In this document: in pieces, positions 27,168 through 32,661 of the stretch
How positions within the stretch are numbered: the first letter of the stretch is position 1
Layout of the letters: every line of letters begins with the position of its first letter
NCBI GenBank assembly: GCA_048013815.1
Contig: CM106585.1
Span: 14,260,001-14,324,000 of the forward strand
Direction: 5' to 3'
Source of the DNA: Setoptus koraiensis
Lineage: Eukaryota; Animalia; Arthropoda
Length of the DNA: 64,000 bases
Translations under genes and position numbers: made by a program
Notes under the pieces: model-generated
What the model saw: only the letters and a program-made list of their open reading frames with translations
What the model was told of the DNA's origin: nothing
Databases searched by the model: none

Positions 27168-27879
27168 TTTTCTGTCACTGTGTATTGTTTCTCTCGCAAA
27201 AGTTGTGATTTTACAACTGAAGATTTTCTACTTGCGTGTGCGTGGTGTCTGTCGTGGCAAGAGTTTTTAACACGTACTTTAACGAGCATTTCAATTCAAT
27301 AATCTTATCAAAAGGTTTTGTCTCATCGTTTTCTTGATCGGCATAGTCTAGTCTGGTTTGGCCGATATCGAGATGATTATGTTGTCTCGACATCAAAATC
27401 GTTTTCTCGGCATGTGTCGACATATTGGCCGCCCACCGGTACAACAGCCTCTGGCCTCTTCATCATGTGGGCGAAAAATTCGCAACAACACTGTTTGTAT
27501 TTGGCGCGTCGAAGTTAACTCGTCGCGCATGCACTGTTTCTCACCAAATAACATTTGTACATTTTTGTATACCGAGATGGATTGGAGAGATTAATGACAT
27601 CTTTTTAATACAACACATATTATCAGGCCACCATTTATGAAATCCTCATTAGGGTCCTCATATATTCAAATTCAACCAACGGCTGTGTACATTGTGTGTC
27701 ACTCATCCATTTATTTATTCCAACACATATATCTTACTTGGTAACGTCGTCACAATCTCACATACGCAACAACAACAAACATGCCGAAAAAGCATGCTGA
27801 CAGAGATTTCGAGGACAGCTCTGATGCCAGTCTAGACCAAGATGATGAGGAGGACGAGCCAAGCGAAGATGACGACGAC
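27168..27879 (+). repeat. Left arm of ~712-bp inverted duplication (upstream region + first 33 codons shared with Spt5)
   Basis: Base-by-base reverse complement of 31951..32661, with only three difference sites (27186, ~27311-27313 including a 1-nt indel, 27524). Confidence 0.97.
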
Positions 27880-28593
27880 AATATGCAAAAGAACAAAGGA
27901 TCAAAGAGAAAGCAAGACTCATCTAGCAAAAAAGGTAAACCTCAGGACGATGTTGTTTTGCTGCAACTACCAGCCTCATCGGCAGCGGCGGCAACTGCTC
28001 TGTCCAAAACTAAAGGAGGACCTAAAACAAAACGTGGTAAGGCTAGACCAAGATTGACCAATTCAGCTAATGCTATCACTCCATGGAAATCGTTGCAACA
28101 TCATTTTATGAGGCATTCTGATGTAAAACAAAGGCCCGACAAAAAACAAACGATGAGCGAATTGAGCAATGAAGGACTTCAGCGTCGAAATGGATGGAAA
28201 GTTTATCATCTTGCAGGACAAATTGACGATTTGATTGACAATGAATTACAAGTGCGAGATCGATTGAATCAATTATTGAACTTATTTGAGACACAAGCTG
28301 CGAAATTAGTTTATGAATTAGGTCAACAATGTGAACGAGACGACACCCCTCATCCTGATGCTTTCGCCATACTGAGGCGACAAAGAAGTTATGGTAGGAA
28401 TGAATTTAATTCAAATCTTATTGTCGACAAATTAGATGATCTAATAAAAGGACATCTACAGAGGAGTACTTTATTTACAGACCAGATGTTGGATTGCAAA
28501 GATGTCATCATGCGCATCAGCGATGAACACCGTGAAAGAGTGGTCAGGATTATCTCCAAGTCCTTAAACAAACGATCATATGTATTCAAATGA
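27781..28593 (+). CDS. SAP130: SAP130 C-terminal-domain protein (Sin3-HDAC subunit) with Spt5-identical N-terminus, 270 aa, intronless
   Basis: The first 33 aa are identical to Spt5. PWKSLQHHFMRHSDVK...GWKVYHLAGQI and KLDDLIKGHLQRSTLFTDQMLDCKDVIMRI match my recollection of the SAP130_C domain (W...NHFQRYSDVRVK...GWKVHLCAAQL; INELIQGNMQRCKLVMDQI). Confidence 0.72.
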   Translation: MPKKHADRDFEDSSDASLDQDDEEDEPSEDDDDNMQKNKGSKRKQDSSSKKGKPQDDVVLLQLPASSAAAATALSKTKGGPKTKRGKARPRLTNSANAITPWKSLQHHFMRHSDVKQRPDKKQTMSELSNEGLQRRNGWKVYHLAGQIDDLIDNELQVRDRLNQLLNLFETQAAKLVYELGQQCERDDTPHPDAFAILRRQRSYGRNEFNSNLIVDKLDDLIKGHLQRSTLFTDQMLDCKDVIMRISDEHRERVVRIISKSLNKRSYVFK

Positions 28594-28824
28594 CTAAATT
28601 TGGTCTCATATCTGACAAGACATATTAAACGCTTCACAGGACTAAAAAAAATATGTATACCTGAATCTAAAAGATTCCTACTTATTTACATGATTATTTA
28701 CTGTTCATATATTTTTTATCATGTATTCACGCTGTAAATCTATTCATTGTTATTTTCGTAAAGGTGAAATTGAGTCTATTCCCCAAATATACAACAATCC
28801 TTTTATTTTGTATGAAAGAATCGT

Positions 28825-31800: not shown

Positions 31801-32049
31801 CTTCCTACTATCAATACTCTCATACTCTTCGTCCTCTTCCGAGTCCTCCTCTTCGTCATCGTCATCTTGGTGTTTGCGTTTTTTGCTAGAGGACGCTTGG
31901 CCTCTCTTAGATCCTTTCTGCTTCGAATGAGATGAGAATGCTCTATCATCGTCGTCGTCATCTTCGCTTGGCTCGTCCTCCTCATCATCTTGGTCTAGAC
32001 TGGCATCAGAGCTGTCCTCGAAATCTCTGTCAGCATGCTTTTTCGGCAT
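28825..32049 (-). CDS. Spt5: Transcription elongation factor Spt5 (DSIF large subunit), 1074 aa, intronless
   Basis: Acidic N-terminus, FILDEAEVDD, NGN domain (DPNLWMVKCRIGDEK...KGYVYIEA), multiple KOW repeats and CTR repeats (GSQTP, GGRTP). Confidence 0.98.
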   Translation of the reverse strand: MPKKHADRDFEDSSDASLDQDDEEDEPSEDDDDDDRAFSSHSKQKGSKRGQASSSKKRKHQDDDDEEEDSEEDEEYESIDSRKHKKKKKNERERVSDFILDEAEVDDEDANEDDEYEGEDLEDLIDRDKRSEVAEHEQNINKHRRLQMIWENKKEEEIEDYYRRKYAEQSEAERSSYGHGDSEELNDEITQTALMPTVKDPNLWMVKCRIGDEKMTALQLMRKYIAYEKTPEPLQIKSVIALDSVKGYVYIEAFKQTHVKQAIAGVNSLKLGIHKQTMVPINEMTDVLRVVKEPIRIKVDQWVRLKRTIYKGDLAQVDYVDTAQNQVHLKLMPRIDYTKMRGALKSSDPESNKKRTMFKRPPQKPFDVDAIRSIGGEVTTDGDFHIFEGNRYRRGYLFKSFPLNAIIAEGVKPSLAELERAEERGLDDAELQLGAAKDIKFAPGDKVEVAEGDLIRLPGKVLTIDGTKVTMMPKHDELTEALVFEASSLKKCFDEGDHVKVIDGRYQGDTGHIVTVDENSAVLISDLTMDEIKVLIRDLQLCADMATGVDSLGQFNWGDLVQLDQSTVGVIIRLEKENLQVLNQNGKVKLVKPQAVIKKGDVKRKAQAIDRNGAQFTVKDHVSVVDGPHKGKMGEVKHIFRSYVFLHSRLAVLECGGMFVCKTRHLALSGNSSKSSASSFSSPVMNDVCASPRLTSPRHPSSGGLSYGGGPMMNSNHLGGRNRENMQLIGTTIKIIKGSYKGHVGIVKDAIGENARVELHSDCRTITVARANIKPTDGVSFSTNSMPSYTTRATPLYGSQTPSHGGRTPLHRGLATPMHDGSQTPMRSSEDWVSQPTPRADFDYEEQNSSMTPSIYNNPATPSYRAPENPDSSELSAYPPQTPGVYSGPSSYMAAPSPAAASFQGGVAPSPSSSAYVAPSPGFQNPSSAAGFNAYPPMTPGPTSMLSFHPKTPGANIDGAHEWQQPDLEVRITNTTSLDQLLYNQCGYIRSVSGGVAAVYLKEEDRVVSVPSTDLVPVQPEARQRFMVIFGDLHRHATGTLMSIDGAEVMCQLDNGTVQVLAYQNLCKLKDIEE

Positions 32050-32661
32050 GTTTGTTGTTGTTGCGTATGTGAGATTGTGACGACGTTACCAAGTAAGATA
32101 TATGTGTTGGAATAAATAAATGGATGAGTGACACACAATGTACACAGCCGTTGGTTGAATTTGAATATATGAGGACCCTAATGAGGATTTCATAAATGGT
32201 GGCCTGATAATATGTGTTGTATTAAAAAGATGTCATTAATCTCTCCAATCCATCTCGGTATACAAAAATGTACAAATGTTATTTGGTGAGAAACAGTGCA
32301 TGCGCAACGAGTTAACTTCGACGCGCCAAATACAAACAGTGTTGTTGCGAATTTTTCGCCCACATGATGAAGAGGCCAGAGGCTGTTGTACCGGTGGGCG
32401 GCCAATATGTCGACACATGCCGAGAAAACGATTTTGATGTCGAGACAACATAATCATCTCGATATCGGCCAAACCAGACTAGACTATGCCGATCAAGAAA
32501 ACGATGAGACAAAACCGATGATAAGATTATTGAATTGAAATGCTCGTTAAAGTACGTGTTAAAAACTCTTGCCACGACAGACACCACGCACACGCAAGTA
32601 GAAAATCTTCAGTTGTAAAATCACAACTTTTGCGAGAGAAACTATACACAGTGACAGAAAA
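31951..32661 (-). repeat. Right arm of the inverted duplication (native Spt5 5' region, inside the Spt5/Cdc20 divergent intergenic region)
   Basis: Reverse complement of 27168..27879. Confidence 0.97.

What the first reader, a model, noticed from the sequence alone, without database searches (positions are those of the whole stretch)
27168..32661. Two convergent transcription-regulator genes enclosed by ~712-bp inverted repeats: a potentially invertible cassette
Seen: 27168..27879 and 31951..32661 are ~99% identical inverted copies enclosing a 4,071-bp spacer. Each arm holds ~610 bp of upstream sequence, the ATG and 33 codons, and points inward to SAP130-like (+) and Spt5 (-). A crossover inside the arms would invert the spacer and leave both ORFs intact, while swapping which gene body lies next to the Cdc20 promoter versus the protease 3' end. 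Inference: a promoter-sharing module that enforces co-expression and may exist in two orientations.
Basis: partly seen in the sequence, partly recalled or inferred. Interest (0 to 1): 0.85.

Follow-up and report, generated by a model that had tools for sequence, protein, structure and literature searches.

The report
Spt5 promoter copied onto neighbouring SAP130
In a very compact gall-mite-like genome, a flipped copy of the front end of the Spt5 gene (upstream DNA, start codon, first 33 codons) now heads the neighbouring SAP130 gene and is kept almost identical to the original, which makes a real inverted repeat that could flip the two genes, although no flipping has been shown.

Summary
Windows 27168-27879 and 31951-32661 are inverted copies that differ by 4 substitutions and 1 single-base indel (99.3% identical), around a 4,071-bp spacer. 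Two DNA runs show the arm at twice the depth of its flanks, with all four junctions present, so it is not an assembly artefact.

**What it is:**
- The right arm is Spt5's native 5' region. The head-to-head Cdc20/Spt5 pair is conserved in the closest relative found.
- The left arm is an inverted partial copy that replaced the ancestral N-terminus of a short SAP130. That N-terminus (MWYG...SPASSTSTVDQQE) is conserved in 15 of the 16 relatives aligned and absent here.
- Homology continues 67 nt inward at only 75%, past an 18-nt indel. This indicates an old duplication whose outer 712 bp are homogenised by arm-to-arm gene conversion.
- An RNA-like contig runs unbroken from inside the left arm into the SAP130 body, so the chimeric gene appears to be expressed.

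**What is not shown:** There is no recombinase, and flipping would cause no change in product. Flipping would be a neutral by-product, not a switch. Co-expression is an inference.

The scan has already noted similar promoter and start-codon captures elsewhere in this genome. This is a tail-to-tail variant of them.

The parts
31951..32661 (-). Right arm, the original: Spt5's native upstream region (613 nt), ATG at 32049 and codons 1-33.
   Evidence: The Cdc20/Spt5 head-to-head pair is conserved in relative L003. An acidic N-terminal extension is present in related Spt5 proteins.
27168..27879 (+). Left arm, the inverted copy of the Spt5 5' region. It now supplies the upstream region, ATG (27781) and codons 1-33 of SAP130.
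   Evidence: Twice the flank depth in DNA runs. No residual homology beyond the outer edge (z = 0).
27880..27955 (+). Decayed inner part of the old duplication (SAP130 codons 34-58): an 18-nt indel, then 67 nt at 75% identity to Spt5.
   Evidence: I3; (local alignment z = 12.8; Fisher p = 5e-16 against the arm).
31857..31950 (-). Spt5 counterpart of the decayed inner part (codons 34-64).
27781..28593 (+). Chimeric SAP130 gene, 270 aa. Residues 1-58 derive from Spt5, a short linker follows, and the SAP130 C-terminal domain starts at about residue 77-88.
   Evidence: X7 contig 27591-28850 crosses the junction.
28825..32049 (-). Spt5, 1074 aa in a single ORF, with the full NGN and KOW1-7 domain set.
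27880..31950 (.). 4,071-bp spacer holding both gene bodies. This is the segment that would flip after a crossover within the arms.
   Evidence: A single 4,131-nt contig in X1 overlaps both arms.
32960..34540 (+). Cdc20/Fizzy, head-to-head with Spt5. Its RNA-like contig starts at 32847, outside the arm.
25666..26835 (+). Cathepsin-L-like cysteine protease. Its 3' end lies 332 nt upstream of the left arm.
27637..27744 (+). 35-codon upstream ORF in the shared leader. Its mirror copy is at 32086-32193 on the - strand.
   Evidence: It lies inside X7 contig 27591-28850.

Best explanation
About 0.8 kb of the 5' end of Spt5 was copied in inverted orientation to a site about 4 kb away. The copied piece held the upstream/promoter region, leader, ATG and at least 58 codons of the acidic N-terminal tail. 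It landed in front of the C-terminal domain of the convergently oriented neighbour SAP130 and replaced that gene's ancestral N-terminus and, presumably, its promoter. The result is a chimeric SAP130 gene that starts from a copy of Spt5's front end, while Spt5 itself stays intact.

Since then the outer 712 bp of the two copies have been repeatedly overwritten by arm-to-arm gene conversion and are now 99.3% identical. The exchange stops at an 18-bp indel, beyond which the copies have drifted to 75% identity.

Shown here: the repeat, its two-copy state in reads, the direction of copying, the loss of the ancestral SAP130 N-terminus, the step in identity, and a contig joining arm to SAP130 in an RNA-like run.

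Inferred: that the arm contains the working promoter, that the two genes are therefore co-regulated, that conversion is ongoing, and that crossover-type resolution occasionally flips the spacer. Such a flip would be silent for both proteins.
For: The repeat and its exact differences. It is real in reads, with twice the depth and all four junctions in two DNA runs. Gene identities. Polarity: the Cdc20/Spt5 divergent pair is conserved in L003, the closest Spt5 relative (about 70% aa), which has no SAP130 downstream. Related Spt5 proteins carry a comparable acidic and basic N-terminal extension. Fifteen of the 16 short SAP130 relatives aligned share the N-terminus MWYGKQASPASSTSTVDQQE; the spider-mite protein P0023 does not, the window protein lacks it, and no remnant is in the window. 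Old age plus conversion: the inner 67 nt are 75% identical with 5 synonymous differences in 22 codons, against 4 substitutions in 712 nt that are mostly non-coding (Fisher p = 5e-16; inner homology z = 12.8, outer flanks z = 0). Expression: X7 contig 27591-28850 crosses 27879/27880 with no branch while Spt5's 5' 870 nt have no cover in that run, and X5 contigs reach both inner junctions. A hint of exchange: the X5 right-arm contig carries the left-arm base at 32306.
Against: Runs X5 and X7 are of unrecorded kind; I read them as RNA only from their gene-shaped, uneven cover. No transcription start was mapped, so promoter sharing is inferred. No close relative (same genus) was available, so the event cannot be dated or polarised by phylogeny. 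The SAP130 relatives are only 44-58% identical, and their loci show no conserved synteny. Contigs pop bubbles, so the 32306 variant may reflect which copy dominated rather than a real exchange. A single conversion event and repeated conversion cannot be told apart.
Confidence: 0.8

Rival explanations
1. This is an actively flipping segment. Homologous recombination between the arms keeps both orientations in the population or within individuals, as in human inversions mediated by inverted repeats. Orientation would matter because it decides which gene sits next to the Cdc20 promoter region.
For: The arms are 712 bp at 99.3% identity, only 4 kb apart, and show signs of past exchange. The assembly graph is fully compatible with either orientation. 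The X5 right-arm contig combines right-arm outer variants with the left-arm base at 32306, which is what a crossover between 27313 and 27524 would give. In humans a 782-bp, 99.9% identical stretch is proposed as an inversion breakpoint, and HsInv0241 swaps the first exons of AQP12A and AQP12B (PMC3961182).
Against: No read or contig spans an arm, so no second orientation was seen (no joints reported). The 32306 pattern is equally explained by a short conversion tract or by bubble popping. Both orientations give the same promoter-leader-ORF fusions, so a regulatory effect would need elements beyond 613 bp. Cdc20's RNA-like contig starts at 32847, about 170-190 bp outside the arm.
Confidence: 0.25
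2. A single recent inverted duplication of 712 bp with no gene conversion. The weaker similarity just inside the arms would then be a chance resemblance between low-complexity lysine- and acid-rich codons.
For: The arm edges are sharp, and the inner region is compositionally simple.
Against: The inner homology is collinear, in frame and directly adjoins the arm. It scores z = 12.8 against shuffles, while the outer flanks score z = 0. 15 of 22 residues are identical (my own count from the aligned codons).
Confidence: 0.06
3. An assembly or polishing artefact: a mis-join, or a falsely duplicated or homogenised arm.
For: Near-perfect inverted repeats are a classic source of assembly error, and X1 may be the sample the assembly came from.
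Against: Twice the k-mer depth in the arm, and all four arm/flank junctions, appear in X1 and also in a run from another sample, X2. Both inner junctions appear in X5, and the SAP130 junction in X7. Both ORFs are intact, and SAP130_C has no other start.
Confidence: 0.02
4. A gene-carrying transposon or foldback element whose terminal inverted repeats are the arms, or a programmed recombinase-driven inversion switch.
For: The layout, long terminal inverted repeats around cargo, looks superficially like Pack-type or foldback elements and like phase-variation cassettes.
Against: The right arm is the native Spt5 promoter region in conserved synteny with Cdc20. The arms contain the genes' own start codons. 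There is no third copy in the window. No matching target-site duplication is at the outer edges (sequence). No transposase or recombinase domain is in the arms, the spacer or the four flanking ORFs scanned. There is no Rfam or tRNA feature.
Confidence: 0.03

Closest known systems
[quoted passage not shown] HsInv0241 at AQP12A/AQP12B, and the Xq28 FLNA-EMD inversion)
   Same: High-identity inverted repeats flank a short unique segment that holds genes. A crossover within the repeats flips it without breaking the genes. HsInv0241 even exchanges first exons, and a sub-kb stretch of near-identity is thought to be enough. Exchange between repeats homogenises them.
   Different: In those cases both orientations were demonstrated; here none was. 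There the arm genes are paralogues, or the arms lie outside the genes. Here two unrelated genes share a promoter, leader and 33 codons. The arms here are much shorter (0.7 kb against several to tens of kb).
Chimeric genes formed by partial duplication with capture of a neighbour's 5' end (Drosophila tandem-duplication chimeras, PMC5460883, PMC4069613)
   Same: A new gene structure takes its promoter and first coding segment from one parent and the rest from another, and the donor gene stays intact.
   Different: The Drosophila cases are mostly tandem (direct) duplications that add an extra gene copy. Here the copy is inverted, lies 4 kb away across two gene bodies, and replaced the front of what appears to be the resident SAP130 gene rather than making an extra one. 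It has since been kept identical to the donor.
Sex-chromosome palindromes with arm-to-arm gene conversion (primate X and Y palindromes, PMC8327919)
   Same: Inverted arms are far more alike than their age predicts, there is a sharp step in identity at the arm edge, and the spacer can invert.
   Different: Those arms are 10 kb to 1 Mb, hold whole testis-expressed gene copies and lie on sex chromosomes. Here the arm is a promoter plus a gene start shared by two different genes.
Other promoter and start-codon captures noted by this scan in the same genome (s1-303156, s1-318729, s1-303151, s1-325844, s1-333808)
   Same: An inverted copy of a neighbour's upstream region, ATG and first codons heads an unrelated gene, and some cases have near-identical cores attributed to conversion.
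   Different: Those noted are mostly head-to-head pairs with the palindrome between the genes. Here the genes are tail-to-tail with the arms on the outside, and this is the geometry that makes a silent flip of both gene bodies possible. I did not re-examine those loci.

Membership tests
Chimeric gene by partial duplication with 5' capture | The 5' segment is homologous to a different, still intact parental gene. | tested here: met
   613 nt upstream plus 33 codons are identical to Spt5, and a further 22 codons are about 68% identical. Spt5 is complete.
Chimeric gene by partial duplication with 5' capture | The 3' segment belongs to another family whose members have a different, conserved 5' end. 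| tested here: met
   SAP130_C domain. Fifteen of the 16 relatives aligned share the MWYG...SPASSTSTVDQQE N-terminus (the spider-mite protein P0023 differs); it is absent here and has no remnant in the window.
Chimeric gene by partial duplication with 5' capture | The chimeric transcript exists. | tested here: met
   X7 contig 27591-28850 bridges the junction, with 289 nt on the arm side and 971 nt on the SAP130 side. The X5 contig starts 30 nt inside the arm. Caveat: the run kind is inferred to be RNA from the pattern of cover.
Inverted arms homogenised by gene conversion (palindrome-type concerted evolution) | Arm identity is far above that of adjoining homologous sequence of the same duplication. 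| tested here: met
   4 substitutions in 712 nt against 17 in 67 nt, Fisher p = 5e-16.
Inverted arms homogenised by gene conversion (palindrome-type concerted evolution) | Arm-specific variants are seen moving between arms in different individuals. | tested here: inconclusive
   The X5 right-arm contig has the left-arm base at 32306, but contigs pop bubbles and the run kind is unknown.
Inversion polymorphism mediated by inverted repeats (NAHR) | High-identity inverted repeats flank a unique segment. | tested here: met
Inversion polymorphism mediated by inverted repeats (NAHR) | Both orientations are observed. | tested here: inconclusive
   Only k=31 contigs were served. None spans an arm, and the graph is the same for both orientations. 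The junction was not found in metagenome contigs, and the protein is not on record elsewhere.
Programmed DNA-inversion switch (site-specific recombinase) | A recombinase is encoded at or near the element. | tested here: not met
   The spacer holds only SAP130 and Spt5. The arm ORFs have no Pfam hit. The four flanking ORFs scanned are a protease, Cdc20 and a BBS-like gene.
Programmed DNA-inversion switch (site-specific recombinase) | Inversion changes which gene is joined to the promoter. | tested here: not met
   Each arm carries the same upstream region, ATG and 33 codons, so either orientation gives the same two fusions.
TIR, foldback or Pack-type transposon | Repeated termini elsewhere in the genome, and target-site duplication. 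| tested here: not met
Exactly two copies in the window. The outer flanks are unrelated and no direct repeat sits at the edges.

The most novel reading that the evidence does not exclude
The locus is one instance of a genome-wide habit of this miniaturised mite genome. Short-range fold-back (inverted) duplications repeatedly hand one gene's promoter, leader and first codons to a neighbour, and gene conversion then locks the two promoters together. In tail-to-tail cases like this one, the same exchange also toggles the orientation of the enclosed genes, so that both arrangements coexist in populations.
Probability: 0.2. Interest if true: 0.7.

Novelty: new variant of a known kind. Interest (0 to 1): 0.45.

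Why it matters
- **Gene front-end replacement.** It is a clean natural example of a probably essential chromatin regulator (SAP130, Sin3-HDAC complex) losing its own front end. It now runs on a copy of the promoter, leader and N-terminal tail of another core transcription factor (Spt5).
- **Promoters tied together.** Gene conversion ties the two promoters together, so a regulatory change in one is either erased or copied to the other. That is a simple mechanism for locked co-regulation of unrelated genes.
- **A testable inversion locus.** It offers a small locus, tractable by PCR, for asking whether sub-kb inverted repeats toggle gene order in an arthropod.
- **A possible genome-wide mode.** Together with the scan's other notes on this genome, it may point to an unusual mutational mode in extremely streamlined genomes.
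- **On its own it is modest.** Each ingredient (chimeric gene, arm-to-arm conversion, repeat-mediated inversion) is already known.

Tried and rejected
- **Orientation from reads.** The only runs served for the DNA were Logan contigs, and no contig spans an arm. The 2026 raw-read RNA runs carry the label of 'organism C', which looks like a much-sequenced host rather than the mite. I therefore did not spend the single read-laying run on them.
- **Other assemblies or samples.**
  - The chimeric protein is not on record.
  - The exact arm/SAP130 junction is absent from metagenome contigs.
  - No protein of 148-472 aa has a similar N-terminus.
- **Synteny.** Three SAP130 relatives' contigs (L001, L002 and one without DNA) and two short ones have no Spt5 nearby. 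A second Spt5 relative's loci, L004 and L005, have a NOB1-like gene upstream of Spt5 rather than Cdc20, and no SAP130 nearby. The ORF downstream of Spt5 in L003 is not SAP130 and has no Pfam hit.
- **Remnant of the ancestral SAP130 N-terminus.** None in the window.
- **Hidden features in the arms.** No Rfam family, no tRNA, and no Pfam domain in the arm ORFs.
- **Residual homology outside the outer edges.** None.
- **Literature.** Two eriophyoid genome papers (PMC7738191 and bioRxiv 10.64898/2026.08.24.746826) do not mention inverted repeats, inversions or shared promoters.
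Full report
**1. The observation**

- The repeat finder reports arms 27314-27882 / 31948-32516 (569 nt, one mismatch) and 27151-27310 / 32519-32678 (160 nt, 95%).
- A global alignment lists every difference between 27168-27879 and 31951-32661: T/A at 27186, a 1-nt indel at 27310, two substitutions at 27312-27313, and C/T at 27524. That is 99.3% identity over 712 nt around a 4,071-bp spacer.
- Each arm contains 613 nt upstream of an ATG (27781 on +, 32049 on -) and 33 identical codons.
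- It is the only inverted repeat of 80 nt or more in the 64-kb window. The other inverted matches are CA/TG microsatellites, plus one short 43-nt hairpin-like pair at 2697-2841 (79% complementary).
- The arm has exactly two copies in the window.

**2. Is it real DNA or an assembly error?**

I laid the contigs of four public runs on 26918-32911.

In the two DNA-like runs the arm is a single collapsed 693-nt contig (27187-27879). These are X1, which is possibly the source sample, and X2, which comes from a different sample and study.
- Arm depth is 161.8 and 205.2, against 80.5-93.5 and 106-131 for the flanks and spacer. That is about two copies.
- In X1 the spacer is one 4,131-nt contig (27850-31980) that overlaps both arms by the 30 nt expected for k=31.
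- The left outer flank contig ends at 27216, and the right one begins at 32613. Each is exactly 30 nt past the outermost arm-specific variant.

This is the graph expected of a true inverted repeat, so mis-assembly is very unlikely. The same graph is symmetric, however. It fits either orientation of the spacer, and no contig spans an arm. The orientation question cannot be answered with the data served.

**3. The genes**

- 27781-28593 (+) has a SAP130 C-terminal domain.
- 28825-32049 (-) is a complete Spt5, with Spt5_N, NGN, KOW1-7 and KOWx.
- 32960-34540 (+) is Cdc20/Fizzy.
- 25666-26835 (+) is a papain-family protease with an I29 propeptide.

All are single ORFs. The best named relatives are mites: Aceria tosichella for Spt5 and Tetranychus urticae for SAP130. 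Earlier notes of the scan call this a gall-mite genome. Short SAP130 proteins of 211-314 aa that hold only the C-terminal domain are the rule in this lineage.

**4. Which copy is the original?**

- In the closest Spt5 relative available (L003, about 70% aa identity), Cdc20 and Spt5 are head-to-head as they are here. The ORF downstream of Spt5 is not SAP130.
- Related Spt5 proteins carry a comparable acidic and basic N-terminal extension ahead of the conserved Spt5_N motif.
- By contrast, 15 of the 16 short SAP130 relatives aligned share an N-terminus (consensus MWYGKQASPASSTSTVDQQEIIF); the Tetranychus protein P0023 starts differently. The window protein lacks it altogether, and no trace of it is in the window.
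- SAP130 homology begins only at about 28009-28045.

So the right arm is Spt5's native 5' region. The left arm is an inverted partial copy that replaced SAP130's own front end. No protein of similar length elsewhere has this N-terminus, and the chimeric protein is not on record in other assemblies. Close relatives are simply not in the databases, so this says little about its age.

**5. An old duplication kept young**

Homology does not stop at the arm edge. After an 18-nt indel, 67 nt (27889-27955 against 31857-31923) are 75% identical, in frame and collinear (I3, z = 12.8 against shuffles).

Of the 22 aligned codons, 5 differ only synonymously and 7 change the residue (my count from the sequences). 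This stretch has therefore diverged for a long time.

The arm shows 4 substitutions in 712 nt, most of it non-coding, against 17 in 67 nt for the inner stretch (Fisher p = 5e-16). Only arm-to-arm gene conversion, once or repeatedly, explains that contrast. The indel at the edge is a plausible barrier to the exchange. Outside the outer edge there is no residual similarity (z = 0), so that edge is probably the original breakpoint.

There is one hint of exchange between samples. In X5 the contig that is continuous with the Cdc20 flank has right-arm bases at the two outer variant sites but the left-arm base at 32306. A conversion tract, a past crossover, or bubble popping in the contig builder could each produce this.

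**6. Expression**

Runs X5 and X7 have no recorded kind, but their cover is uneven and gene-shaped.

In X7:
- There is no cover on 26918-27590 or on 31177-32846.
- One 1,260-nt contig runs from 27591 (190 nt upstream of the ATG, inside the left arm) straight through the arm edge into SAP130 and on to 28850.
- The Cdc20 contig begins at 32847, 113 nt before its ATG and outside the arm.
- Because the Spt5 5' end is uncovered in X7 and the contig does not branch at 27879, those arm k-mers come from the SAP130 copy.

In X5, contigs reach both inner junctions (27850-29045 and 31368-31980).

An eriophyoid genome paper reports that transcript contigs often merge adjacent genes in such compact genomes (PMC7738191). 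That fits the long X5 contig across the Spt5-Cdc20 spacer.

I therefore take the chimeric mRNA as expressed, and both arms as transcribed at least in their proximal part. The true start sites remain unmapped. The shared leader holds a 35-codon upstream ORF (27637-27744).

**7. How it most likely works**

The arm supplies each gene with the same proximal upstream DNA, leader, upstream ORF, start context and 33-residue acidic N-terminus. Conversion ties the two copies together, so the two genes should respond alike to whatever acts on that DNA. This is an inference, and depth in contigs is no measure of expression.

A crossover within the arms would flip the 4,071-bp spacer and give protease-arm-Spt5 and SAP130-arm-Cdc20, with both proteins unchanged. 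Such flips are known for human inverted repeats, including one that swaps first exons and one with a proposed 782-bp breakpoint region (PMC3961182).

Nothing here suggests a dedicated switch. There is no recombinase, no RNA gene, and the outcome of a flip is identical in product.

**8. Comparison and novelty**

The parts are all known: chimeric genes by 5' capture (PMC5460883), palindrome-type conversion (PMC8327919), and repeat-mediated inversion (PMC3961182).

What is unusual is the combination. An inverted, short-range copy replaced the front of an unrelated resident gene and has stayed identical to its donor. The tail-to-tail layout also makes a flip silent for both genes.

The scan has already noted several promoter and start-codon captures by inverted duplication elsewhere in this genome. 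I did not re-test those. They raise the possibility of a genome-wide mode, of which this is a geometric variant. Two eriophyoid genome papers do not mention anything of the kind.

**9. Verdict**

Interest is moderate.

Noticed in passing
window 27637-27744 (+) and mirror 32086-32193 (-): The shared leader contains a 35-codon upstream ORF that ends 12 codons before the main ATG, plus a 4-codon one at about 27595. If the transcript starts at or before 27591, both mRNAs would share the same upstream-ORF control.
   Followed up: partly
window 31823-31852: Run X2 has a low-depth 325-nt contig (6.4 against 131) that shares only these 30 nt of acidic-codon sequence with Spt5 and then continues into sequence not found in the window. 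It could be another locus, another organism in the run, or a rare rearrangement.
   Followed up: partly
proteins P0001-P0016, P0024 (alignment A2): Short SAP130 proteins holding only the C-terminal domain, from mite-like compact contigs, share a strongly conserved N-terminal motif (MWYGKQASPASSTSTVDQQEIIF) with no Pfam annotation. It is lost in the window's gene.
   Followed up: partly
window 28594-28850: Only 231 nt separate the stop codons of the convergent SAP130 and Spt5 genes. An RNA-like contig (X7) runs from SAP130 across the gap and past the Spt5 stop, so the 3' UTRs may overlap in antisense.
   Followed up: no
window 26899-26919: The X5 contig laid on 26919-27145 carries 20 letters before 26919 that do not match the window, plus two base differences. 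This may be a strain difference or a transcript end downstream of the protease gene.
   Followed up: no
L003 446-6349 against window 28825-34540: The Cdc20/Spt5 head-to-head pair, both genes intron-free, is conserved between the window and a relative about 70% identical at protein level. The intergenic DNA shows no detectable similarity.
   Followed up: yes
window 2697-2841: A small imperfect hairpin-like inverted repeat: 43-nt arms, 79% complementary, 59 nt apart.
   Followed up: no
window 35199-36659: A 486-aa ORF with weak matches to BBS2 and BBS7 beta-propeller domains lies downstream of Cdc20.
   Followed up: no
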